The notes: generated by a model not told the origin, from the letters alone. DNA of 64,000 bases from Mizuhopecten yessoensis (GCF_002113885.1 NW_018408821.1:1077676-1141675), one strand, 5' to 3'; counted from the first letter of the stretch, positions 2,136 through 61,860 are shown. Translations and numbers: made by a program.

Positions 2136-4078
2136 ACAGCAAAATTAAAGAAAAACAAAAGCACAAAAACTCTAAGATGGCTAAGCAGAGAAAGCAGAAA
2201 ACTGATGCTCGATTGCTCAACATCATCACCCCTCGACAGGAGGACCTGCAGCAGAAACTCCGGGCAAGGATAGAGGAACTTCAAGGTGTGTGATTTATAT
2301 ATACAACTAATAAGCTTTTTGGTTGTGATCAAATTGGTAAGAAAGTTGTGTTGGGAACCTTAAGACGGAAATTATAATCGCAACATCCAAACTGGTAAAT
2401 CTATTTGAAATATGTGTAATTACGATGGTGTACCACTTAGAAATGGGATTTGCAGCATAATTTTGCCGTGTAAAATCGATCGCTGGCTTGGTATATCCAT
2501 TTGACAGTCTTTTATGCTTTTACACTTTTAGCTTTGACCTACTACTAGAATTTGACAGTAAATCTGACAGATATCAAAAGAAAACGTCATGCAACATTTA
2601 AACCAATTAATCAATTATGAAATGTATCAATCGGTTAATTTGAATTGGTTGTACAATTGATTGATTTTCGATTATAATCAATTATCGGAACAACACTATC
2701 AGAAAGTGTTCACAAAATGTGTGTCAACTTAGTTGTTGCTTTTGAAATTCTCACTGATCTACTTTGCTGTGCAGTGCTACAACAAAAGTGAATAATTATA
2801 GTACACTAATCTACAGTACATGTATATGCAGCATTTGATACTGGTCTGATTACAAACCAATGTATAATGCCATCCTGGAACTAGACTTTTTCCATGATGA
2901 AAGATGAGGTATTAAAGACACAAAAATGTAATCCATTAACTAGAATTTATGTGAATAAGTCATGTCTTATAAAGCTGATGTATTTAATAATTTTAAAAGC
3001 ATGTGACCATTAAAAATATATATTCAAATTTTGATAACAAAATCTATTATAAAGAAATGAATCTGTTCATCATTTCATAGCACTGTATAATCATAAGTGA
3101 AGGATAATATAGTACTATTTGATGTCCAGATATTTCAGCCTTGTAGTTATACTACCATTAAAAGTCTGATCGTTTTGAAACAGTTGTATAAAGTAAATTT
3201 TCGAAAACACTTCAAGGGATATTTTTATATTAAAAAAATGTTTAGTATATCTTGGCTTCAGTTGGGTGTTTTTGGATCCTTTTTATGTCACATTTCAGTT
3301 TAGAATTTCAATCTTTTTGAAAATATTCTACATTAAATTTGTGTGAAATTTAAAGTTGTTAATGTAGTCAAACTCTCCACATATTGGTTTCTGGATGTAA
3401 AACAAGCCATTTTAACCAATGTCTTCTTTTTCAGGCAAAAGAGGACTTAGTGTTGATGAGCAGAAAGAAAAAAAGAAATTAAAAAGAAAAGAAAGTCTCC
3501 TCAAACTAAAGCTGAGAAAAAAATTTGAAAAGCAGAATAAAAACAAAGGGAACCTAGCTGTTCAGAAGGAAACAGTAGTGAATGGAGCAGTAGGAAGTCC
3601 AAACTCTAAACCAGTGAAACCCATCTACAATAAGGAGGGTAAACTGGTGTTCAGTAAATTTGACTTCACTGAGGCAGGTGGGAAAGATAGGGGTAAAAGT
3701 AATCTGTCGGGCAAAGACTATAAAAGACTGCTTGAAAAATTAGAAAAACGGAAGGAACATGTAGAAAAAGTGAAAGAAAAAGATGCAGAAAAAGGAAAAC
3801 AAGTAGAGACCAAGATGGCATGGGAAACAGCCATACACAGAGCTCAAGGTCAAAAGGTCAAAGATGATCCTGCTCTTGTTAAGAAAGCCCTGAAAAAGAA
3901 AGAAAAAATAAAGAAGCAAAAATCGAAACAGTGGTCTCAGCGAGACTCACAGACAAAAAAGAGGATGGAAACTAAGATAGAAAAACGTACAAAGAATATT
4001 GAGGAGAGAAAACAGCAAAAGAAGGACAAAAAAAATAAAAGAGCTAAGAAAAAGGGTCGACTTATAGCAGGATTCTGA
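2136..4078 (+). CDS. SURF6: Surfeit locus protein 6 homolog (nucleolar, Rrp14-like); 5'-partial; exons 2136-2285 and 3435-4078
   Basis: Exon 2136-2285 (ttacag| ... g|gtgtg) reads SKIKEKQKHKNSKMAKQRKQKTDARLLNIITPRQEDLQQKLRARIEELQG and joins in phase 1 to 3435-4078 (tttcag|). That exon encodes the SURF6 C-terminal domain: KPIYNKEGKLVFSKFDF, GKDYKRLLEK, AWETAIHRAQGQKVKDDPALVKKALKKKEK..KSKQW, KKKGRLIAGF*. Upstream exons not identified. Confidence 0.95.
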
Positions 4079-6841: not shown

Positions 6842-8083
6842 AACAAGAGGCACAAGAGGGCCTGTATCGCTTACCTGAATATTAAAGCAGTCATAGCAAA
6901 ATATTCTCATAAAATATCATATTGCACTAAAAATATTTCCCTCGCAAACTTTGTTGGCTCCATATGTTGAAACTACCAGCAAAATATTATTATAAGATTC
7001 TATGCTTTTTGATTCTTCCTCAGAAGTTGCTTGACATATTTTTCCCTGTGACCTTGTAAGTAGGTCAATGTCATTTTTATTCTCAAATTGGTTAGCTCAA
7101 TTCCAAAATGCTACCAGCCAAATCTTATGAATCCATTCCTTTTGGTTCTTGAGAACAAATCCTTTAAAATGTTGTAGACCTCTGTGACCTCTAAAGTAGG
7201 TTGAGGTCATTTTCATTCGCAAACTTTGGTGAGCTCTATCCCAGGAAGTCACCAGCCAAATATTATAATTTTATGAATTTTAAGTAGTTTGAACCGTTTG
7301 ACATATATGAACACTGTGACCTTGAAAGTGAGTCAAGGTCATTTTCATTCGCAAACTTTGTTTGGCTCTTTCCCAGGAAATCACCAGCCAAATATTAAGG
7401 TTCTATACCTTCCAGTTCTTCGGAAGAAGTTGTTCCAAGCATTAGACATATCTGCCTCATGTGACCTTAAAAGAAGGTCAAGGTCATTTTCATTCGCAAA
7501 CTTTGTTAGGCTTCTTCTCAGGAAATTACCAGCCAAATATTAAGGTTCTAATACTTTCAGTTTTTCAGAAGAAGTCGTTTGAAGCATTTGACATATTTGA
7601 CTCTTGTGACCTTGAAAGTAGGTCAAACTAATTTTCATTCTCAAACTTTGTTGGGCTCTATCTAGGAAGCCACCAGCCAAATATAAAGATTCTATACCTT
7701 TAAGTTCTTCAGAAGAAGTAGTTTGAAGTTTTTGACATATTTGACCCCTGTAACCTTGAAAGTAGGTCAAGGTCATTTTCATTCTCAAACTTTGTTGGGC
7801 TCCATCAGCCAAATATGAAGATTTTATACCTTTTAGTTCTTCAGAAGATGTCATTTGAAGTTTTTGACATATTTGACCCCTGTGACCTTGAAAGTAGTTC
7901 AAGGTCATTTTCGTTCTCAAACTTTGTCGGGCTTCAACCAACAAAGCTTTCAGTTAAATATCATGACTCTAGGCCTCTCCGTTCATCAGAAGAAGTTGTT
8001 TAAAGGAAAAATTGACGGACGAGGACGGACGGACGCCGCACCATGACATAAGCTCACTTGCCTTTCGGGCAGGTGAGCTAAAA
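6842..8083 (+). mobile_element. Near-complete HINE/pearl-like element with internal tandem array
   Basis: 5' end aacaagaggcacaagagggcctgtatcgcttacctg; seven ~130-145 bp units each with tgaccttgaaagtaggtcaaggtca; (GGAC)n microsatellite ~8013-8034; 3' hairpin agctcacttgcc-tttc-gggcaggtgagct then A run. Explains the repetitive ORFs at 7289-8046. Confidence 0.8.
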
Positions 8084-15119: not shown

Positions 15120-18100
15120 ATGGCTGGTATGAATCTCCTACCAAGGAACCACAGTGAATTCCACTCGCCTCAATATTGGGATCAGTTTTTCCAGAAAAGA
15201 GGAACTAAAGCCTTTGAATGGTTTGTCAGATTAAACTTATACATACAGATTGATAAAGCACATACAATAAGGGGAGATAATTACACCCTCAATTAGACTG
15301 AAATCTCAACAGTCACCATTATTGACAATAAAGTGAGATCTTGATTCCTCTATTATTAGATAATAGTTTCAGCAGTTACCAATGTTGTGATATACAATGA
15401 TACTTGCAGACTTGGGTAAGCATTGATTTTGCCAGAATAGATATGATCTGAATCTCACATTAAAACTACTCAAGAATGCTAAGACATTTTTTTAATCAAA
15501 CAGTATAACTTTAAAAATAACAGGAAACAACAAGATCAGTTAAAACAATTTTGAATTACTGTATTCAATCTATTGATCGTGAATTTTATTAGTCTCACAT
15601 GATACATGTCTAAAATACATTGATGGTTTGTTGTAGGTACGGCGAGTACCCAGAATTATGTGGGATTCTACACAAATACATCAAGCCCAAAGATAAGCTC
15701 CTTATGATTGGATGTGGTAACTCCCAGCTTAGTGAAAATCTCTATGATGTCGGCTACCACAACATCATCAACATTGACATAAGTGACACAGTCATTCGTC
15801 AGATGACCGATAAAAATAAGAAATGTCGTCCTGATATGAAGTTTGTCAAAATGGATGTCAAGAAGGTAAATCGAGGGGAATTTGAGTGATTATTAATACT
15901 AGTAGAGACTTATATTTAGAAATGTCCCAATATTTAACAGTGATAGAAGATAATTTCTAAACAGCTTTTATGATATTTAACACACTGTATAGATCTCTTA
16001 ACTGCCTTTAAATGCCAGCTTTATAATTGATTGCCAACATAGACATCTCTGTAGGATGATATTGATCCTGCAATGTTTAATTTTTCAAGTGAAATACTTT
16101 TGCATAATTTCAATAATTATAATCATTCAGTCTCTAAATTAGTATGTATTGATCATCAGAGGAACCTCATTTCTTGAACTCTTTAGAATATACTGATCCA
16201 GCTGTAGAGTGTAGAACAATCTCATTACCCTCAATTCTTCTCTGTGTTTGCTTTCCTTTTCAAGATGTTTATTTGCAGGATATTAGTGAAAATTCTATTA
16301 ACTGCCAAATTCTATTTCACTGATCTAGAAACACTCCTTATTTCATAGTCTGTTTTCCAAATGGAATTTCTTGGATAAGCAGGATTCCACTCTTACATGT
16401 GCAAAAAAGACTACAGATGTTTTATTTTAAATTTCACTCTCACTATGAAACAAATTAATGGTATATCCTATATTGATTATATGGTGTTTCTTTAGACAGA
16501 TTTTTTGGATGGCGAGTTTGGAGTTGTCCTGGACAAAGGAACCTTGGATGCCCTGATGGTGGATGACAGTGCTGATGTGGTGGCTGATATTGATGCCATG
16601 TTTACAGAAATCGGGAGGGTCCTGAAACAGGGAGGGAGATACATCTGTATCTCTCTGCTACAGGACCACATCATGAACAAAGTCCTTCAATTCTTCCCAG
16701 ACCTGTTAGTCTAAAGAAATCCTAGTTCTAACGATTGCATGAACAATGAAAACAGCTTTATTAGAGTAGAGATACTTTGTCTCTAAAAAGCTATATCTAC
16801 TGTAACTTGAGTTTTAGCATCAATATGAAAAATCATTCCTATTTTTTTCATGTGCTTTTTTTTATTCATGCTGAGGTTCAAAAACTGCTTCTTAACATGC
16901 TGTAATTATTTTCACCTGAAAAACAGTGCAATGCCAGTAATCCTCAGTGTAGTTGAAGGAAAATGCAAAATTATGTACGCTTATATTTTCACAAACATTC
17001 AAGTATTTGGTTTTGTAGATCGGGATAAAATACTATATGAATTTTTTGTTCTAGTGGATGGCCATTAAGGATTCACAAGGTTAACACTGAAGACTCCGAG
17101 AATAAAGACAAGGAATTCAACATGCCTGTATTTGCTGTTGTCCTTACTAAATTCAAGAAGCTACCAAATATGAAACAGGTTATAAGAATATAGCAATTTT
17201 AATGCATTTTTGTCTTGATTTACTTTACTACATAGTAAACTATGTATTATTACACTGACTGAATATTAGTAAACTCTCGTTAAGGATCCCTGTCCCACTG
17301 CAGACAAAACTCTAGAAAATTCCAGAGTACTTTTTCATAAATACAGTAACCTCCCCTTAACTGTATACTGTAGTGGGCTGATCAGCTAAGTGATTTCTAT
17401 TGACCCTGTATCTGTGTAGCACAGTTGGTTATTAGAGTGACTCTATTGTGATAGTTATGGTTCTATTTTCATATATATTTTTTTCTTCATTAATGATATA
17501 TTAAAGCTATTTCCAGCCTGATGTAAAAGTTTCAAATTCATCGATACAGCTTTTGGGCAGTGTTATGGTGGTCCTGAATATAATGGACGTATATCATGAT
17601 CAGTGAACAACAACGTTATTTGTCAATGGATAGAAAGTTAAAGTCAGAAAGTGAATGCCAATGGTCATTGTTCGTATAAACTTAAAAATTTAGACATAAC
17701 TAAGTATTCACTATTGGCAGTAGTATTCTAATTCAGCATAAACAGGGGGCCATGGTGGCCAAGTGGTGAAGACGTCTGGCCGTCTACTATCACTAGCCCT
17801 CCTACATTGGGCAGGTACTGGCCGCAGGTTAGCAGTTTTTCTCCAGCTTTCCTCCACTTCCAAAACCTGTACGTCCTTATTTAAATTATAATAGCTATTA
17901 ATAGGTCATAAAACACAAACAGATAGATAAAATCAACATAAAACAAAATGCTTTCAGATCCTGGAGGTGGGAGCAAGTGATGATAAGGTGGAGCGGATGG
18001 AGTCCACAGAGAAGATGCAAACAGTCTTGAAAGAGATGCAGTACTATGCTTTAATGAGGCAACAGATCAAGAAAAGGTATGTACACTGTATGCACCTGAA

Positions 18101-21100
18101 AATAGCAAAGGAAACACATATCAATTCTCTACTGACCATGTATAGACATGCTGTTTCTGTTCATGATGTGTTAAAATATGTATGCAACTATTGTGAATAA
18201 GGTTCTTCATCTACTCTCTGTCCCTTAGGGCTTTAAATGTCTGTGTCTGTGAGGATGGGAGTTTAGTTAAAACACCATATTGCTGCTAGAATTGTTTCAT
18301 ATACACCCATATGTCCATTTGAAAGAGTATTTCCAAACCAAACAAGATCTTGTGACAAAATAATTGGAAGAGTATTATATTATTTTATTGATAGAAACAA
18401 CGGCAATTTCAGTTTCAGGATTGTTTTTTGAAGGGATATTCCATAGTTGATTGCACCGGGGAAGGAACCTATATTATGGTTAAAACCAGATTTGCCTACC
18501 ATTCCTTATACTAATTATGAAATAAAAATTAAAGATTTTATAGCTAGTGGGGTCTCTGAAAAAGTTCCCCATCCCTCCCTTATGGTTAAATATGGAACAG
18601 CCCTAACAGTATATTGGTTACACTATTCTGTGCTTTATAGGGAGATGGTTGGAGAACAGGTGTCTCTCAGTCTGTACAGTGAAGTGTCCCTTGCCCCACG
18701 CTACACCCTATTCATAGTGGACAGTGCTGACCAGAAACTCGCCAACAAATTCGGAATATTCATTGTACCGGAGGGCAGGTGAGATTTAATAGTCATTTCA
18801 ATTGGTTTGAATATCAATGCAATGTTTTTTGTTCCTCTTTTTTCAGGCGCTGTGGCTAAATGGCCTCTTCAATGGTTTGATTTTTTGTCTGATACCTGTT
18901 TGATTCTTTATAGATTGATACACATTGATACATTTCAAACGAACAAGAAAATACTTTTAAATGAAATAAATGTTACTGATGTAGGTGTCAAAGAAAATAA
19001 TATTAATATTGACAGAGAAACAGAGTGGATGTTTAGTACAGAAGAGGGCAGACAGCAGCTTTCTGAGTCGGCTGGATTTTGTAGACTAGTGGTGATTACT
19101 CTCAACCGAGCTCACACTTATGAAACATTGGATACTATCAAATCAGAGTTATCTCCTCATGTCCTAGAACTGGCACCACCAAATTTCAAATCAGGATCAC
19201 AGGTATGCTTGATAACTAAGATTTATTTTAGATGTAATCACACATCAGACTTCGTTCTATTACACGCCTGATAAAAATCAGGACCTAAATTTTAAATATT
19301 CATGAATTGTTTCCACAAAAAAGCAATAAACCCATTGCCCCAGCTGTAAGAATAAAGTTTCATAAACCATGAGAGTCATAAGGAAACATTTGCATCTACA
19401 TGACTCCTTTTTGTAATGGACGGCTTTAATTTTTCGCTTCACCATGCACCGTTTACATCTCACAGAAGTTAATTACATGATATACTATAACAGATCTTTA
19501 TGCAAAATATTCTTTTTTTTCTGTTTTTCCATTGGACTTAGGTGCCTTACCTATCACTAGGCGATCAGAAGGGCAGCAGGACTGTCAGGTACCAAGGCAA
19601 AAGTCCTACCCTCGGGGAGCTGGTTGTCGAGGATGTTGTCACTGATCCAGGGCAACACAGAAGGAGACTTGTGTTTACGGACAGTCTTCCGTATTGTGAG
19701 GCAAGACTTAAACCAGGTACTTTTAAAATGGTTTGCAGTGAACCATTTAAGGTCATTCAGCTAATTGAGTTATTGATAAACTTTCATATACAAATGTAAT
19801 TATATTTGGTTATTGAAACTGTGTGTATTGTGTTAGACAATAGGTTCATGCTTCCCTCACTGATTATCTCACATACAATTTAAATGCAGTTGGAGTGATA
19901 ACATTGGTCAATAAGCTATTCTCTTACCCTGGACAGGTGTATACACACTTTTACCGGTGTGAGATTTCCTCGTCTCACCCTAGGGTTGAGATGGCAGGGA
20001 TTCCCCTATTCATAACAATGGTATGACTGAATTTAGCCTGTAATTTTTAACATTACATCTTGTATCTGATACACAATTGGGTGAAAATGGGGGAATCTCA
20101 ACCCTCTGGGAAAAATTCTTAAGTTGCCAAACTCTTCACTCTCGGGTTGAGATTCCCGTACCCCAAGGGAGTGAGAGATTCTATTCCTCTCAAGCGGGAT
20201 GCTTTTTCTTAAAAATTGTATGCTGAACTAACAGCTTCAGTGTTACAAAAGAAAATAACATGATGTTGAAATCCAACAAAAAAAGAAACAGGAAACAGTT
20301 CTGATATATATATACATGTAGCAGACAATCTATCTAAGTGCTTGCAATTAGTTAAAATGTTGAGAAACATCCATAGAAACTGTAGGGAAACGGATAGGGG
20401 ATCTTCTGAACTATTTCGATGGAAAAGAAATTGCTGTGTCATATTATTTTGTTATGTTTCATTTCAGAAAAAAAGCAGAAAAAAGGGAAAAATAAAGCAA
20501 AAGAGACTGGAAAATTCCTTTTGGACAAGAATTATTTGGACTGCGATTACCTAACAGCTATGGTGGCTGGTCTATCATTTGTCACGGGAACGACTGATCA
20601 GGCCAAAGGTAAGATATCGGTATAATGTAGGCACCTTTTGATTTATAACTAGATTGACAACCAGGCTAAATGTGGGCTTCCTAGTATTTTTGAATGAGAT
20701 TATGTTATTAATGTGATTTTTGTCTTTGTTTGGACTTAAATATCTCAATATCTAAATTTAACTTACACTTAAAACAAAGAATTCCAATGGCTGTAAGGTT
20801 TGGTATTTTATTTGTCATAGATGGAGGAGTATTTTGAATGCCTATAAAGAGGTTTGTAACTTCACAAGCAAACACATATTTGTTATCAATAACAGAGTTG
20901 TTGTACATGTGAGTGTTTCATTCCCATGATATTGTAAGAAATACTTTACCCTTATTTGCAATTGTTCATAGTACATACGATTCATTAAGCCTTTATTTAA
21001 TATTGAGAACATTTTTTTAAGAAAAAAACCTGCTTTTAAGAAAAAAAACTGCTTTTTATTTTTTCTTCAAAATTAGTGCTACCTTTGTACATTAAACCTT

Positions 21101-24100
21101 GTTATATTGCCACCGTTTAAGTATCAACAAAACTTGTGGCCTTGTGGCATTTGGCAGTAACATAATTGGGGTTGTTAAGAGAAAAATCAGAATCTTGAAA
21201 GATGCTGGTGGTAGATGAGTTGACTGTTGAAACAAGTGTTGATTTATATCAAGCTTATGTTTTGTGTTGTGTCAGTATAAATTGGTGTTTTGAGAAATGT
21301 GTTTTGTGATGTTTGTTTAATTTTTGTTTTGAAATAATCTAATGAAGATTTTCTTTTGTTGAAGTTATTTTTTGTTCTTTCAGAGTGTTATCTGTCAGAT
21401 TCTAAAGTGTTGGTGATAGAGGGGAGGAATGGAGGCCTTCCTACATTCTTGCATCACAACTTCCCCCAGGTATAGTATAGCCTATACTGAAACAAACAAA
21501 CAAAACCCAGTGATATCTGGGTACTCATTCAGTGGCTTCCTGTCGGGCTAAAGTCTTGCTACTGAGAACCTTAAAACCTCTGATTAGTTATTATTTCATA
21601 TATAACATGCTTTTATATTGGTTGATTTGGCTTATATCCCCTCCTGGTATGGGAAAAAGAATGGGCCTTTGGTATCCTACTGCATCTTGATATCTGAAGC
21701 ATAAAGTCTTGGGCTTCAAAAAAATCTAGGATAGTTCTACTTCATCTGCTTATAAGACAGTCAAGAAATCATAAGTGTCATATTGTCCATGATATATCTC
21801 ATATACTGTGTGATCTAATTGTCAAATTATAAAAGTGTGTGTACCTCATGGGATGGCAGTCTGTCACCCACCGAAATTGGGTAAGGTATCCCACTATTTG
21901 CAGGATCAGGGCCCTTTATTTATTGTTCATCACACTAGGTGGGGTAGATCTCATCTGTCATCTCCAATTACATTGTACCTCATTTTCATTGCCATTACCT
22001 CAGTGTATGATGGAGTGTTGCCACTGTTATCAGAGTTATGTCCCTTCGTTCACTGTTCACCACTTTGTCACCTACATATATATATTAAATTTCTTGCGTA
22101 TAGAGATAGCAGATTGAAACTCACTATATATGCATAATTATGACCCTTTGTTCATTTATGATACCAAAGTTTGTTGGGAGGTAGGGGACTATGAATTGCT
22201 GATAACAGTTTGGCTAGTTTGTAATTCTATGATGTAGTTGTAGTGACTTGGTGATCTATTATGTCATGTCTGGATGTTCATGGTTACCGTGTTCTGCTGT
22301 ATTATGCTGGGGACCGATTATTTGGTGTATTATATTGGTTGTGATTTACTGGTGTATTGATATTGGTTGTGATTTACTGGTGTGTCAATGTTTGGTGGTC
22401 ATAGTTATTATATGTTGTATCATGGAAATTGATGGTTGTAATTAATCGGTGTATGGTTGTTGCCAGTTGTTATTAACTAGTGTGTGGATGTTGATGGTAG
22501 TATTTAATGTATGGATGGTTTTGTTTTTATTACAGATGGCACTGACTGTACTGTTTCCTGATACTGTGATGCTACAGGTAGCCACAGACTGGTTCAGCTT
22601 TTTACCAGACACCATTATGCAAGGTCATTGTGATAACCCAACCACATTTATCAGCAGCAGCATAACGCAAGGTACAGTATTCTCCTCAGTTCATTATGTT
22701 TATTAGTTTTAGTTCCAATTGATCACTCCTATAATGAAGCGTCTGTCGTTCGCCCATTCGTTGTCCGGCGTCCAGCGTCAATATTTTACTTTAAACAACT
22801 TCTTCTTAATAACCAAAATGTCCAGGCTATGATATTTGGCCAGTAGCATGCTGGGATGAAGGGCTACCAAGTTTGTGCAAATGAATGACCTTCACTTATA
22901 TACAAGGTCACAAGGGTCAGTTGTCTTAAAAAAACTTTAAACAACTTCTGAAGAATAACCAAAATGACCAGTATTGTGATATTTGGTCAGTAGCACACTG
23001 GGATGAAGGGCTACAAAGTTTGTTCAAATGAATGACCTTCACCCATATTCAAGGTCACAGGGGTCAAATATGTTAAAAACTTTAAACAACTTCTTCTGAA
23101 TAACCAAAAGGACCAGTATGGTGATATTTGGTCAGTAGCATGCTGAGATAAAGGGATACCAAGTTTGTTCAAATGAATGACCTTGAATTATATTCAAGGT
23201 CTCGAGGGCAATTTTTTTTTAAATCTTTAAACGACTTCTTCTAAATGACCCTGAGGCCCAGAATGTTATATTTAGCCAATAGCATGCTTGGGCTATACAA
23301 TTTGTTCAACATAATGACCTTGTTTGACTTTCAGGTTCACAGGGGTGAAATGTTTTAAAATGTTTTAACTGGTTCTTTTGAATGACTTTTAATAATAAAT
23401 ACTGATATTTTGCCTGTAGCTCTATTTTAGATCACTTATAAGTTTACATGTGTGAGTGTTTTACCAGGTGAGCGATGTAGGCCTATTGGGCCTCTTGTTT
23501 ATATGTTCAACTAAAGCAGGATTTAGATCCAAGATCATCTCTCCAAAATTTAAAAAGCGATATCACTAGCCTGGCATTAATTAAAGAAACATTTGCAAAT
23601 TTTCTCAGTATGTGAGTCTGAATGAAAAGGAATATCATCAAAACCTTGTTAGCTTGAGAATGGAAAATCATCAATGCTTTGTTAGCACGAGAAAGGACTA
23701 TCATTAATGCCTTGTTAGCTTGAGAAAGGATTATCATCAATGCCTTGTTAGCTTGAGAAAAGAAATATCATCAATGCCTTGTTAGATTGAGAAAGGATTA
23801 TGATTAATGTCTTGTTAGCTTGAGAAAGGAATATCATCAAGGTCTTATTAGCTTGAGAAAGAAATGACATAAACACTTTATGTGTTTGAGAAAGAAATTT
23901 CTATGTCAAATTTTCTTCAGTATATCTTTTTTTCAGAAGTCATCTTGAAAGGAAATCGTCCTTTCTGAAGCAAGATTATAACGGAGGTTTGTCTAACTGT
24001 TGGGACTTTAGGAGGAGATCCATTGTTTACTGGCCTGTCTAGATGATAACTGGGTTAATACAACATTCGACTGTTCTTTTTGTAGGTTTACAGGTGGATG

Positions 24101-25534
24101 CTGTAGTAATTGATCTGGACTACCTCAAGTCCTCACTTACAATGGACAGTTTCCTGCAAGAATCGTTTTTATCAGATGTCAAAAAGCTACTTTCACCAAA
24201 TGGTATGTGTAAAAAAGTTCTTGGTTTTTCTAGTGAAGCATATTTAAAATGTTTACTGTGTTTTAGAATTCCAGGAAAAGATAATGTGGGACAGTTTGAT
24301 ACTTTACATCATCAATTGTATTTATTTTTGAATGGTCACCATCAAAATTTACCTGCCAGATGGTTTTGGAAATACCTATTTTCAGATAATGATTGTAAGA
24401 AGAAAATGTAGCTATTAATCATTAATATGAAATATCAAGATAATTGATATTTTACAGCCAATTTCATTTCAGAGCACTAACCTGATATAAATATCCCTGG
24501 TATTTGTCCAGGAGATGGATGGAGGGATTGTTTATTCATGCATGATCATTCTAGTAATTGTTTTAGATTACCCCATCCATATACTGTATTATTGATAAAA
24601 AGTTTCTTTCACCTCAGACAGAGATATCTCGCACGTTACCTAGTTCTAGATTTTTCTATCTCGTCTGATTTCGTGGTGATGTATTCATCTGCACGCTAAT
24701 GCAAGTGATACAGTTTTTAAATTCTGTTTTGTTATAATATGCATTGTTTTGGTGTTTTATAGATATCTAATGGTGTAAATAAAAATATAATCTACACTGA
24801 AATGTAATCATTCTTGCAAGGACAGACATTCAAATGAAACTTTAGAAGTGAAGAGGCCATATTCATTTGAGGCCCCGGACAGGATACTTGTAGACCAAAG
24901 CAAAATTGAGTATTTTTACGAATTAAAAGGTGCAAGAAAAAGATTCCATTACCTGTAACTGAACGAAATAGGGTTATCTTAGTCTTGGGCTAATATTCTA
25001 TAACATCCCCACCTTGGCTTACGCCTCTGTTTGGATTTTATGTTACAAAATCCTAGTCCTTGACTGAGGTAACCTGATCTCGCTCAGTTACAAATACATG
25101 TAATAGATTTTATTAGTCTACCGGCCCACAATCAAGCAAATACATTTATATCAATATCTAGCATAGTCCTTCACTAAAACTGCAAACCATTTACCTCATC
25201 TGTTCAACAGTGAATTAACAATCTCAGCTTAATCTTTTACCATCGTTTCATTGCAGGTGTTGTAGTATGCAAGTGTCAGTGTGATCCAAAGGAGACAAAG
25301 AAAACATTGCTTCACAAACTGTCCAGTAGTTTTCCAAACATTTACTCAACAGACATTGAGGACACATCTTACACAGTTGTAATCGCTCTAATGTGTGACA
25401 AGAACAATGCAGATACATTAGAGGCAGCGATGTCAAACTGTAAATACCTGAATAATATACTGGGGAGTAAAGACAAAGACATTGATATAGATTTAGTACA
25501 GACCATGACAGACGTCACATTGTTTGATCCCTAA
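15120..25534 (+). CDS. METTL13: eEF1A lysine and N-terminal methyltransferase (679 aa); exons 15120-15220, 15637-15865, 16496-16704, 17055-17178, 17958-18076, 18641-18778, 19016-19202, 19542-19716, 20468-20608, 21384-21469, 22536-22671, 24086-24202, 25257-25534
   Basis: 13 GT-AG exons sum to 2040 nt in one frame. Diagnostic sequence: [154 protein letters not shown]. Confidence 0.97.
17745..17920 (+). mobile_element. Degenerate tRNA-derived SINE
   Basis: Head ggggccatggtggccaagtggtgaag (A box), central gtttttctcc..ctttcctccac block, A-rich tail. Confidence 0.6.
19850..20200. mobile_element. MITE-like foldback repeat
   Basis: Repeated inverted motifs ggaatctcaaccct / gggttgagattccc and tctcaccctagggttgaga. 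Confidence 0.45.
22722..23499 (-). mobile_element. HINE/pearl-like element with ~145-bp internal tandem units
   Basis: ttaaac(a/g)acttct recurs at ~22791, 22937, 23082, 23226; (cgtc)-rich microsatellite at the left end; terminus caggtgagcgatgtaggcctattgggcctcttgtt at the right end. Confidence 0.8.
23630..23895. repeat. 33-bp minisatellite, ~7-8 copies
   Basis: Unit ~ccttgttagcttgagaaaggaatatcatcaatg; gives the 11-aa periodicity of spurious ORF 23507-23740. Confidence 0.9.
24954..25092. mobile_element. Degenerate foldback hairpin, probably same class as 13676-13826
   Basis: tgtaactgaacgaaatagggttatcttagtc ... gactgaggtaacctgatctcgctcagttaca arms, apex ccttggcttacgcctc. Confidence 0.55.
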
Positions 25535-61542: not shown

Positions 61543-61860
61543 CAGGGGCGGGTCCAGGTGAGGGCGTAATGGGCGTACGCCCCCCNNNNNNNNNNNNNNN
61601 NNNNNNNNNNNNNNNNNNNCTATCGTAATCTGCTAATATTGTATTGAATATGGCAATTAATCATATTCATTAATTAAACACATACTCTGATTTCTTTTTA
61701 TACTGACACCCTGACACTTTAACTATAAAAAATATACATGCTCCAAGTCAGGAACCGTTACATTAGTGCATTTCACAATTATTTTATGTTTTTTAGCCAA
61801 AAAAATGTCCATTCTTTTTTATTCTACACCCCTCTTTCAAATATCATAGAAACGCCCCTG
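61543..61860. mobile_element. MITE with CAGGGGCG termini and 5-bp TSD (contains the assembly gap)
   Basis: TGCAT|CAGGGGCG ... CGCCCCTG|TGCAT. Confidence 0.7.
61586..61619. other. Assembly gap (34 N) after a poly-C run
   Basis: Run of n in the sequence. Confidence 0.99.

What the first reader, a model, noticed from the sequence alone, without database searches (positions are those of the whole stretch)
19542..25534. METTL13 C-terminal methyltransferase domain looks catalytically dead but is retained in frame (candidate pseudoenzyme)
Seen: the N-terminal domain (eEF1A K55 methylase) has intact motifs ([21 protein letters not shown]). From exon 8 onward the protein stays collinear with METTL13 but the SAM-binding residues are replaced. 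Motif I reads [12 protein letters not shown] (exon 21384-21469) versus canonical LLVVGLGGGSLP. The post-I acidic residue is lost: ALTVLFPD versus IDAVEID. DNPTTFI replaces DGLDYI, and [11 protein letters not shown] replaces DVDSKDPTLGMSCPP. Structural residues ([29 protein letters not shown]), all splice sites and the frame are preserved. The canonical sequences are human METTL13 from memory. Inference: this lineage has lost METTL13-dependent eEF1A N-terminal methylation, or moved it to a paralog, and keeps the domain as a scaffold or binding module. I saw no alternative canonical exons in the introns or downstream.
Basis: partly seen in the sequence, partly recalled or inferred. Interest (0 to 1): 0.8.

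Follow-up and report, generated by a model that had tools for sequence, protein, structure and literature searches.

The report
Scallop METTL13 with dead C-terminal methyltransferase
The Yesso scallop's METTL13 gene, like that of every other scallop examined, keeps a working lysine-methylase half but has turned its second, eEF1A N-terminus-methylating half into a conserved, expressed and almost certainly inactive 'pseudoenzyme' domain, a natural experiment on a protein modification thought to be nearly universal in animals.

Summary
Window 15120-25534 (+) holds the single-copy, 13-exon METTL13 orthologue of Mizuhopecten yessoensis, identical to NCBI protein P0269 (679 aa). RNA-seq joints confirm all five C-terminal introns and show no alternative exons.

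The N-terminal K55-methylase domain is intact (omega about 0.05). In the C-terminal MT13-C domain, the residues shown experimentally to matter in human METTL13 are mostly replaced:
- Lost: G503 to R, E524 to F, D551-G552 to N-P, N647 to Y, plus a 4-residue deletion of the SCPP loop.
- Kept: only the Post II aspartates D575 and D577.

The same degenerate state is shared by five pectinids (Mizuhopecten, Pecten, Argopecten, Ylistrum and one unnamed transcriptome). It is absent from 33 aligned canonical orthologues and from all other sequences among the 189 scanned, so it is a scallop-lineage event. It is at least about 130 My old, with a burst of change on the pectinid stem.

The domain is not decaying: omega is 0.21, and omega = 1 is rejected (2dlnL = 155). 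No second MT13-C exists in the genome. The only animal-type eEF1A N-terminal exon found reads MGKGEK, which breaks the Glu-at-P3 rule of MT13-C.

Best reading: a dead domain kept as a structural or docking module, with METTL13-dependent eEF1A N-terminal methylation lost. I found no published description.

The parts
15120..15220 (+). METTL13 exon 1 (start codon at 15120)
   Evidence: Exact spliced mapping of P0269 onto the window; tblastn at 97-100%.
15637..15865 (+). Exon 2: MT13-N motif I (MIGCGNS) and Post I (NIDIS), both intact
   Evidence: Pfam Methyltransf_11/25/31 hits above cut-off on P0269 residues 50-163.
16496..16704 (+). Exon 3: MT13-N motif LDKGTLDAL, intact
17055..17178 (+). Exon 4 (end of MT13-N)
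17958..18076 (+). Exon 5 (middle region)
18641..18778 (+). Exon 6 (middle region)
19016..19202 (+). Exon 7 (METTL13-specific middle region, [12 protein letters not shown]...)
   Evidence: It finds METTL13 orthologues in the 1.84-billion-protein library.
19542..19716 (+). Exon 8. Scallops carry a 2-residue deletion and changed residues here ([14 protein letters not shown] against canonical LIFLSNxNxVQSEARL).
   Evidence: RNA joint 19716/20468; alignment.
20468..20608 (+). Exon 9: Lys-rich linker and first helix of MT13-C (YLDCDYL against canonical YLACQHH)
   Evidence: RNA joints; alignment.
21384..21469 (+). Exon 10: degenerate motif [13 protein letters not shown] at 21407-21442. Human G501/L502/G503/G504 correspond to E487/G488/R489/N490.
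22536..22671 (+). Exon 11: degenerate Post I (LTVLFPD; the Phe codon at 22554-22556 takes the place of Glu524) and degenerate DG motif (DNP at 22632-22640; Asp551-Gly552 become Asn-Pro). The structural stretch QVATDWF is kept.
24086..24202 (+). Exon 12: Post II reads IDLDYLK. The Asp575 equivalent (24112-24114) and Asp577 equivalent (24118-24120) are kept, SKD becomes YLK, and a 12-nt deletion removes the SCPP loop (117 nt here, 129 nt in Mytilus).
25257..25534 (+). Exon 13, with stop at 25532-25534. CKCQCD (25268-25285) replaces LNLVCRD, the Tyr codon at 25370-25372 replaces Asn647, and the conserved C-terminal helices follow.

Best explanation
This is the one-to-one METTL13 (eEF1A-KNMT) orthologue of the Yesso scallop.

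Its N-terminal 7BS domain, which dimethylates eEF1A Lys55 in human, is intact and strongly constrained. Its C-terminal 7BS domain (MT13-C), which trimethylates the eEF1A N-terminal glycine in human, has lost its S-adenosylmethionine pocket. The glycine-rich motif I carries Arg (Ser in Argopecten) at the Gly503 position. An aromatic residue replaces Glu524, which binds the cofactor ribose. The DG motif is gone. On the substrate side, Asn647 is lost and the SCPP loop is deleted.

The change happened once, on the stem of the scallop lineage, after it split from oysters, pearl oysters, mussels and ark shells and before the living Pectinidae diversified (at least about 130 My ago). Since then the domain has been kept in frame, transcribed and under purifying selection. 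It therefore acts as a non-catalytic part of the protein, most likely a fold-stabilising or eEF1A-docking module for the still-active Lys55 methylase.

METTL13-dependent N-terminal methylation of eEF1A is lost in scallops. This fits the altered eEF1A N-terminus, GKGEK instead of GKEK.

Shown: gene structure, expression, orthology, motif loss, phylogenetic distribution, selection regime, single copy. Inferred: no SAM binding or activity, loss of the modification, and the scaffold or docking role.
For: Gene model and expression:
- Five GT..AG joints are seen in 4 RNA runs, and one contig spans all C-terminal exons.
- The exact 13-exon mapping equals P0269.

Key-residue loss:
- Jakobsson et al. 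2018 (PMC6109062) name Gly503 and Glu524 (AdoHcy coordination), Asp551-Gly552, Asp575, Asp577 and Asn647. [quoted passage not shown]
- Alignment to 5WCJ and to 33 canonical domains gives G503R, E524F, D551N/G552P and N647Y, with D575 and D577 kept.
- Of 37 columns at least 85% conserved in canonical MT13-C, 15 are kept in all scallops. These are the structural residues plus D526 and D575. Eighteen are replaced.
- Motif I itself varies among scallops (GRNGG against WSNAG), although it is invariant in the 33 canonical sequences.
- Pfam Spermine_synth passes its cut-off in mussel, oyster and Solemya but not in any scallop.

Distribution:
- Five pectinids share the state.
- Among 189 orthologues, only these five show substitution-type loss at 3 or more core residues.

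Selection:
- ML omega in scallops is 0.049 (N domain), 0.071 (middle) and 0.214 (C domain). In mussels with canonical domains it is 0.023, 0.043 and 0.059.
- Omega = 1 is rejected for the scallop C-domain, 2dlnL = 155.
- The pectinid stem branch is 1.11 substitutions per site in the C-domain against 0.20 in the rest of the protein, a ratio of 5.4 where the typical ratio is about 2.

Fold homology: E = 1e-17 to 5WCJ by sequence. The AF2 model has pLDDT 88 and its best PDB hit is 5WCJ, TM 0.73/0.79.

No paralogue: whole-genome searches with Mytilus METTL13 and with a canonical MT13-C profile find only this locus. No hidden exon is present in the window.

Substrate: the only animal-type eEF1A first coding exon in the assembly reads [13 protein letters not shown]. 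Human MT13-C has a very strong preference for Glu at P3, consensus M-[GAP]-[KRFYQH]-E-[KRQHIL].
Against: - No biochemical test exists. Some predicted pseudoenzymes have turned out to be active.
- Both Post II aspartates, one of them essential, are kept, and the new Post II sequence DLDYLK is almost fixed in scallops. This could mean a surviving ligand-binding function rather than mere scaffolding.
- The C-domain evolves faster than the N-domain even in canonical clades: dN ratio 1.8-3.7 in mussels and 2.2 in oysters, against 3.7-9 in scallops. The relaxation is about two-fold, not dramatic.
- The confident AF2 model depends on canonical rows in the alignment. With the five scallop sequences alone, pLDDT is 46.
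- The eEF1A N-terminus was read in one assembly only. It was not checked in RNA or in other scallops.
- Isolated human MT13-N methylates eEF1A in vitro without MT13-C (text), so a need for the C-domain is not established.
Confidence: 0.75

Rival explanations
1. The domain is dead and has no function of its own. It persists as a passenger, because frameshifts or stops in exons 8-12 would trigger nonsense-mediated decay of the useful N-terminal enzyme, and because a translated domain must still fold. That alone would keep omega below 1.
For: The residues kept in all scallops are mainly hydrophobic or structural ones. Omega of the C-domain is 3-4 times that of canonical mussels. Three of the four exonic variants seen in RNA runs in this part are non-synonymous: K443N, I530T, M633R and V556V.
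Against: Omega of 0.21 has been sustained over at least 130 My in five lineages, with omega = 1 rejected at 2dlnL = 155. Scallop-specific replacements have become fixed (E487, N490, DLDYLK, C-x-C-x-C), which looks like new constraint rather than drift. Annotated shorter isoforms lacking the C-domain exist in other species (for example P0234 and P0186), so truncation is an available route that scallops have not taken.
Confidence: 0.13
2. The domain is still an enzyme. Its pocket was remodelled together with its substrate (eEF1A GKGEK), and it binds SAM or another cofactor in a non-canonical way.
For: Enzyme-side and substrate-side changes coincide. Post II Asp575 and Asp577 are retained, purifying selection continues, and the new Post II sequence is fixed.
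Against: All three cofactor anchors defined in the crystal structure are gone. E524A alone abolishes activity in human METTL13. The glycine loop differs between scallop species (R489 against S, G488 against W, G491 against A), which is not expected of a working cofactor site that is invariant in 33 other lineages.
Confidence: 0.07
3. eEF1A N-terminal methylation persists in scallops but is done by another enzyme, as Efm7 does in yeast. MT13-C became redundant for that reason.
For: N-terminal methylases of eEF1A arose twice independently, MT13-C and the Family-16 enzyme Efm7 (Discussion of PMC6109062). Nothing here excludes a third origin.
Against: No MT13-C paralogue is present. The eEF1A N-terminus has itself changed at the position most critical for recognition, which suggests relaxed constraint on the modified end. 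No candidate enzyme was identified here.
Confidence: 0.1
4. Artefact: a wrong gene model, an assembly error, or a decaying pseudogene copy while the real gene lies elsewhere.
For: None found.
Against: RNA joints appear in four runs from four studies or samples. Orthologues in three other genome assemblies have the same 13-exon structure and the same degenerate motifs, and the unnamed transcriptome contig shares those motifs. The locus is single in the genome, and the frame is open with omega far below 1.
Confidence: 0.01

Closest known systems
Human METTL13 / eEF1A-KNMT, C-terminal domain MT13-C (PDB 5WCJ; Jakobsson et al. 2018)
   Same: Orthologous protein with collinear two-domain architecture. 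The scallop C-domain matches 5WCJ at E = 1e-17, and the model matches at TM 0.73/0.79. The structural core residues and Post II Asp575 and Asp577 are kept.
   Different: Gly503, Glu524, Asp551-Gly552 and Asn647 are replaced, the SCPP loop is deleted, and NLVCRD becomes CKCQCD. The presumed substrate N-terminus is GKGEK, not GKEK.
Canonical bivalve METTL13 (Mytilus, oysters, Pinctada, Solemya, unionid, heterodonts)
   Same: Same 13-exon gene structure (Mytilus). The N-terminal two-thirds are 55-65% identical.
   Different: Their MT13-C keeps every motif and reaches the Pfam Spermine_synth cut-off. The scallop C-domain is only 24-31% identical to them, whereas they are 42-71% identical to Mytilus.
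Pseudo-methyltransferases that work as non-catalytic partners (METTL14 with METTL3; DNMT3L with DNMT3A/B)
   Same: A 7BS or MTase fold with an occluded or degenerate cofactor site, retained under selection and proposed to give structural support or substrate docking (summarised in PMC10166787).
   Different: Those are separate polypeptides acting in trans, and their inactivity and role are shown experimentally. Here the dead domain is fused in cis to an active, unrelated-specificity methylase, arose recently in one animal family, and is untested.
Engineered METTL13 E524A or G58R/E524A mutants
   Same: Loss of the Post I glutamate abolishes MT13-C activity, yet the protein keeps non-catalytic regulatory effects on METTL11A. 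The scallop protein is in effect a natural E524-null.
   Different: The laboratory mutants change one residue. Scallops have changed 18 of 37 highly conserved positions. The METTL11A interaction maps to residues 1-344, not to the C-domain.
Spermidine synthase family (Pfam PF01564)
   Same: The distant fold relatives of MT13-C are the next-best structural matches after 5WCJ.
   Different: No scallop sequence reaches the family cut-off (best 15.4 bits against 22.9). There is no aminopropyltransferase signature.

Membership tests
METTL13 / eEF1A-KNMT orthologue (whole protein) | N-terminal MT13-N 7BS domain with intact motif I (GCGNS), Post I and LDKGTLDA | tested here: met
   Pfam Methyltransf_11/25/31 above cut-off. 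Omega 0.04-0.05.
METTL13 / eEF1A-KNMT orthologue (whole protein) | Collinear middle region and C-terminal domain homologous to MT13-C | tested here: met
   Exon 7 retrieves METTL13 proteins. The C-domain matches 5WCJ at E = 1e-17. Same 13 exons as Mytilus.
METTL13 / eEF1A-KNMT orthologue (whole protein) | Single-copy, one-to-one orthology | tested here: met
   All strong matches (E up to 3e-8) of the whole-genome search lie at this locus; the two hits on other contigs are weak, E = 0.0045 and 7.6. The scallops group together in the protein tree.
Active MT13-C N-terminal methyltransferase | Motif I glycine loop (Gly503) coordinating AdoMet | tested here: not met
   G-L-G-G-G becomes E-G-R-N-G (E-W-S-N-A in Argopecten).
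Active MT13-C N-terminal methyltransferase | Post I acidic residue (Glu524), required for activity | tested here: not met
   Phe in four scallops, Tyr in the fifth. The requirement is from PMC6109062.
Active MT13-C N-terminal methyltransferase | DG motif (Asp551-Gly552) binding the adenine amine | tested here: not met
   N-P here; the position is variable (N/D/G, then P/L) among scallops.
Active MT13-C N-terminal methyltransferase | Post II Asp575 (required) and Asp577 | tested here: met
   D558 and D560 are kept (D577 equivalent is E in the unnamed pectinid). Neighbours V-S-K-D become L-Y-L-K.
Active MT13-C N-terminal methyltransferase | Asn647 coordinating the substrate peptide | tested here: not met
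   Tyr (Leu in Ylistrum).
Active MT13-C N-terminal methyltransferase | Cognate substrate: eEF1A N-terminus fitting M-[GAP]-[KRFYQH]-E-[KRQHIL] | tested here: not met
   The only animal-type eEF1A first coding exon in the assembly reads MGKGEK, so P3 is Gly. One assembly only; not checked in RNA.
Active MT13-C N-terminal methyltransferase | SAM binding and methyl transfer | not testable with these tools
   Needs the recombinant protein.
Pfam PF01564 Spermine/spermidine synthase domain | Score at or above the gathering cut-off (22.9 bits) | tested here: not met
   No hit in four scallops and 15.4 bits in Pecten. Mytilus 28.4, oyster 40.3, Solemya 28.2.
Pseudoenzyme (pseudo-methyltransferase domain) | Homologous to an active enzyme fold but lacking cofactor or catalytic residues | tested here: met
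Pseudoenzyme (pseudo-methyltransferase domain) | Expressed and kept under purifying selection (not a pseudogene) | tested here: met
   RNA joints. Omega 0.21, with omega = 1 rejected. Five species have an open frame.
Pseudoenzyme (pseudo-methyltransferase domain) | Demonstrated lack of catalytic activity | not testable with these tools
   Inference from residues only.

The most novel reading that the evidence does not exclude
Scallops have dismantled the eEF1A N-terminal trimethylation system on both sides. The writer domain lost its cofactor pocket, and the substrate's N-terminus gained a residue (GKGEK) that breaks the recognition rule. The dead domain was then re-shaped under new constraint: a fixed DLDYLK Post II loop, an invariant C-x-C-x-C strand and an aromatic plug at the Glu524 position. 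It would now be a methylation-independent binding or regulatory module, for instance one that tethers the Lys55 methylase to eEF1A. That would be the first natural, family-wide separation of the two METTL13 activities in an animal.
Probability: 0.3. Interest if true: 0.75.

Novelty: new variant of a known kind. Interest (0 to 1): 0.6.

Why it matters
eEF1A N-terminal methylation evolved twice, as MT13-C in animals and plants and as Efm7 in yeast. This has been taken to mean a strong selective advantage (PMC6109062, PMC8624817).

A whole animal family seems to have lived for more than 100 My without the METTL13 activity that writes this mark, while keeping the Lys55 activity. That makes scallops a natural separation-of-function mutant. 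It allows one to ask what the N-terminal mark does for translation, whether anything compensates for it, and what the non-catalytic part of METTL13 contributes. This is relevant because METTL13 is studied as a cancer target and has reported non-catalytic roles.

It also adds a cis-fused example to the short list of pseudo-methyltransferases. In practice, automatic annotation calls these scallop proteins 'eEF1A lysine and N-terminal methyltransferase', which probably overstates their activity.

Tried and rejected
- Pfam on single C-terminal exons gave nothing. The exons are too short and too diverged.
- The top hit of the representative search, P0001 (3173 aa), is a repeat protein and a spurious match.
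- A search for eEF1A with Pfam PF00009 first led to mitochondrial EF-Tu, EF-G, eRF3/HBS1-like and EF2-like loci. The eEF1A first exon was then found with a degenerate DNA pattern.
- I tried to see whether MGKGEK occurs elsewhere by searching with the 49-aa exon. None of the 120 nearest fragments has it, and 67 read MGKEK. These fragments are mostly unnamed metagenomic pieces, so this says nothing about other scallops.
- AF2 on the five scallop sequences alone gave a low-confidence model (pLDDT 46). That is uninformative. It is not evidence of disorder, but it means that fold retention rests on homology.
- IQ-TREE omega values for mussels, and the oyster pair, suffer from saturated dS, so I compared dN ratios as well.
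- The organism behind the fifth pectinid transcript (SRR26445938) could not be identified.
- The scan's earlier notes held nothing on this locus.
- I did not run complex prediction. No binding claim here is firm enough to warrant it, and no full-length scallop eEF1A has a reference.
Searches were done exon by exon by reference, or with P0269, the identical database protein that a tool returned. Exons were joined only inside local scripts, from coordinates, to check the frame and for codon analyses.


Full report
WHAT IS THERE. The window is AT-rich eukaryotic DNA. On the + strand, between 15120 and 25534, lies a 13-exon gene. Its exact translation is the database protein P0269, 'methyltransferase-like protein 13 [Mizuhopecten yessoensis]', 679 aa. 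The window is therefore from the Yesso scallop. The assembly has 987.6 Mb in 82,659 contigs. The finding's coordinates (19542-25534) cover exons 8-13.

The exon borders of that part are 19542-19716, 20468-20608, 21384-21469, 22536-22671, 24086-24202 and 25257-25534. GT..AG joints confirm them in two transcript-contig sets and two raw RNA-seq runs. One 2248-nt contig crosses all five introns. In the run where the strands differ clearly (X21), the read strand fits a + strand mRNA. No alternative joints touch coding sequence; the other joints listed fall in two intronic repeats. The six exons join to 933 nt, in frame, with one terminal stop.

HOW THE C-TERMINAL DOMAIN DIFFERS. Jakobsson et al. 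2018 (PMC6109062) solved human MT13-C (5WCJ) and defined the residues that matter:
- Gly503 (motif I) and Glu524 (Post I) coordinate AdoHcy.
- Asp551-Gly552 bind the adenine amine.
- Asp575 and Asp577 (Post II) and Asn647 face the substrate peptide.

The scallop C-domain still matches 5WCJ by sequence at E = 1e-17. I aligned it with 33 canonical MT13-C domains from bivalves, gastropods, a chiton, a nemertean, a horseshoe crab, a hemichordate, amphioxus, a bird and a mammal. The correspondences are:
- G501/L502/G503/G504 become E487/G488/R489/N490.
- E524 becomes F510.
- D551/G552 become N537/P538.
- D575 and D577 are kept as D558 and D560, within IDLDYLK in place of (F/L)DVDSKD.
- The four residues SCPP are deleted. 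Exon 12 is 117 nt here and 129 nt in Mytilus.
- NLVCRD becomes CKCQCD.
- N647 becomes Y626.

Of the 37 alignment columns that are at least 85% conserved in canonical domains, 15 are kept in all scallops. These are Gly, Leu, His, Ala, Trp and Phe core positions plus D526 and D575. Ten are replaced by one fixed state, eight are replaced and vary, and four are partly kept. Pfam's Spermine_synth model, which canonical MT13-C domains pass, is not reached by any scallop. The N-terminal domain keeps all its motifs.

WHO SHARES IT. A search with the N-terminal 460 residues of Mytilus METTL13 brought in the scallop orthologues: Pecten maximus (P0270), Argopecten irradians (P0273), Ylistrum balloti (P0274) and an unnamed transcriptome protein (P0272). 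All five pectinid sequences share the same degenerate state, including the 4-residue deletion. P0272 is sister to the four named species.

I scanned 189 near-full-length METTL13 orthologues. Only these five have substitutions at three or more of the six core positions. Most of the other deviating entries are truncated isoforms or model gaps, or carry a single conservative change. Two proteins of unknown taxon, P0094 and P0076, differ from canonical around Post II and were not followed up. Mussels, oysters, a pearl oyster, an ark shell (partial model), Solemya, a unionid and heterodonts are canonical.

The change therefore arose once on the scallop stem. Published dates put Amusium-Pecten at about 130 Mya and use more than 330 Mya for Patinopecten-Crassostrea (PMC10225492). 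The event falls between these dates.

IS IT DECAYING OR KEPT? I recovered exact coding sequences for five pectinids, four mytilids and two oysters.
- ML omega (GY+F3X4) in pectinids is 0.049 (N domain), 0.071 (middle) and 0.214 (C domain). For the four named species it is 0.043, 0.067 and 0.222. In mytilids with canonical domains it is 0.023, 0.043 and 0.059.
- For the scallop C-domain, omega = 1 is rejected with 2dlnL = 155.
- Pairwise NG86 gives C-domain omega of 0.15-0.21 at dS 0.74-1.5.
- Synonymous sites are saturated in the control clades, so I also compared dN(C)/dN(N). The ratio is 3.7-9 in scallops, 1.8-3.7 in mytilids and 2.2 in oysters.
- With the topology fixed, the pectinid stem branch has 1.11 substitutions per site in the C-domain against 0.20 in the rest of the protein. 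That ratio of 5.4 compares with about 2 on most branches.

The picture is a burst of change on the stem, followed by continued purifying selection that is roughly two- to four-fold relaxed. Several replacements have become fixed in scallops: E487, N490, L559, Y561, L562, K563 and three cysteines at i, i+2 and i+4. This suggests new constraint. The glycine loop, in contrast, differs between scallop species (GRNGG against WSNAG). A working cofactor site would not be expected to do that.

IS THE ACTIVITY ELSEWHERE? A six-frame search of the whole assembly with Mytilus METTL13 finds the N-terminal and middle exons only at this locus, and no canonical C-domain anywhere. A profile of 19 canonical MT13-C cores finds only two of the window's own exons, weakly (E = 0.03 and 0.18). 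A local HMM search of the window's six frames finds only the four known exons, in order. The limits of this are an assembly in 82,659 contigs and exon-by-exon sensitivity.

THE SUBSTRATE. A degenerate pattern for GHVDSGKST finds two places in the genome.
- One, on contig C3184, is an animal-type eEF1A gene. Its first coding exon reads [23 protein letters not shown]..., and its second exon keeps GSFKYAW, that is Lys55.
- The other, on C5167, is a divergent paralogue without a start in that exon.

[quoted passage not shown] In the scallop, P3 is Gly. None of the 120 nearest exon-level eEF1A fragments in the protein collection has MGKGEK, and 67 read MGKEK. No paper contains the string.

This fits loss of the modification system on both sides. 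It rests, however, on one assembly and was not checked in RNA or in other scallops.

STRUCTURE. With the 38-row alignment, AF2 gives a confident 7BS model (pLDDT 88.1, pTM 0.88). Its best PDB match is 5WCJ (TM 0.73/0.79, rmsd 2.7 A), followed by spermidine synthases. With only the five scallop rows the model is poor (pLDDT 45.9). Fold retention is therefore an inference from homology and from the conserved core, not an independent result.

MECHANISM, WITH ODDS. Most likely (0.75): MT13-C in scallops cannot bind SAM. Arg or Ser sits in the glycine loop, an aromatic residue sits where the ribose-binding Glu was, and there is no DG motif. It therefore no longer methylates the eEF1A N-terminus. 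The domain is kept because the full-length architecture is useful to the Lys55 methylase, through folding, stability or docking on eEF1A by the remodelled Post II surface. METTL13 is already known to have effects that do not need catalysis (G58R/E524A mutant; PMC10166787), although that interaction maps to residues 1-344.

The rivals are a functionless passenger held by NMD avoidance and foldability (0.13), another enzyme having taken over the modification (0.10, compatible with a dead domain), a remodelled but active enzyme (0.07), and artefact (0.01).

NOVELTY. Full-text searches found no paper that links METTL13 with scallops or with a pseudoenzyme state. The METTL13 reviews describe conservation, not loss. 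The scallop proteins are annotated automatically as 'eEF1A lysine and N-terminal methyltransferase-like'. I rate this as a new variant of a known kind: a lineage-specific, cis-fused pseudo-methyltransferase domain in a well-studied enzyme.

CONSTRAINTS OBSERVED. The N run at 61586-61619 was left alone. Exon references and the tool-returned protein P0269 were used instead, and exon joining was done only in local scripts from coordinates.

Noticed in passing
G000:C3184 (L031:1422-1568:-), outside the window: The only animal-type eEF1A first coding exon found in the assembly starts MGKGEKTH instead of the near-universal MGKEKTH, an in-frame extra Gly. It puts Gly at the position where MT13-C needs Glu. 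It was not seen in 120 nearest exon fragments or in any paper.
   Followed up: partly
G000:C5167 (L032, + strand, about 1459-1960): A second eEF1A-like gene with many substitutions in conserved G-domain stretches (for example KLGGIDQPTLERFEKETAE and DAPGHRKIRQ). It may be a fast-evolving paralogue or a pseudogene.
   Followed up: no
G000:C47633 (L020, 369-bp contig): An eEF1A fragment without introns. Its ...[31 protein letters not shown] stretch looks (from memory) more like fungal or protist eEF1A than animal eEF1A. It may be a contaminant contig.
   Followed up: no
window 22740-23540 and 19740-20140 (introns 11 and 8 of METTL13): Two intronic stretches are covered at enormous depth in the RNA runs (summed contig word depth up to about 8e5). 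They carry many variants, loose ends and internal joints, so they are high-copy transcribed repeats (transposon or SINE-like) and not exons.
   Followed up: no
window 25268-25282 (P0269 C592, C594, C596): An invariant C-x-C-x-C on the strand that is L-N-L-V-C in canonical MT13-C. It is conserved in all five pectinids (CSCPC in the unnamed one). All three Cys would face one side of the strand. The meaning is unknown.
   Followed up: partly
window 3419-4078 (+): An intronless 219-aa lysine-rich ORF (…KEGKLVFSKFDF…LEKLEKRKEHVEKVKEKD…) that resembles, from memory, the SURF6/RRP14 C-terminal domain. Not tested.
   Followed up: no
window 7540-7944 (-): A 134-aa ORF made of three copies of a unit of about 40 aa (…SLRMKMTLTYFQG.RGQICQKLQTTSSEELKG…), probably a tandem repeat rather than a gene.
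   Followed up: no
window 20514, 22615, 24108, 25392: Exonic variants are seen in RNA runs: K443N, I530T, V556V (synonymous) and M633R. That is three non-synonymous to one synonymous in the C-terminal third, too few to test.
   Followed up: partly
P0094 (658 aa) and P0076 (825 aa), proteins: Two METTL13-like proteins of unknown taxon keep motif I, Post I and DG but differ from canonical around Post II in the large alignment. This may be misalignment, or other lineages with altered substrate sites.
   Followed up: no
   Followed up: no
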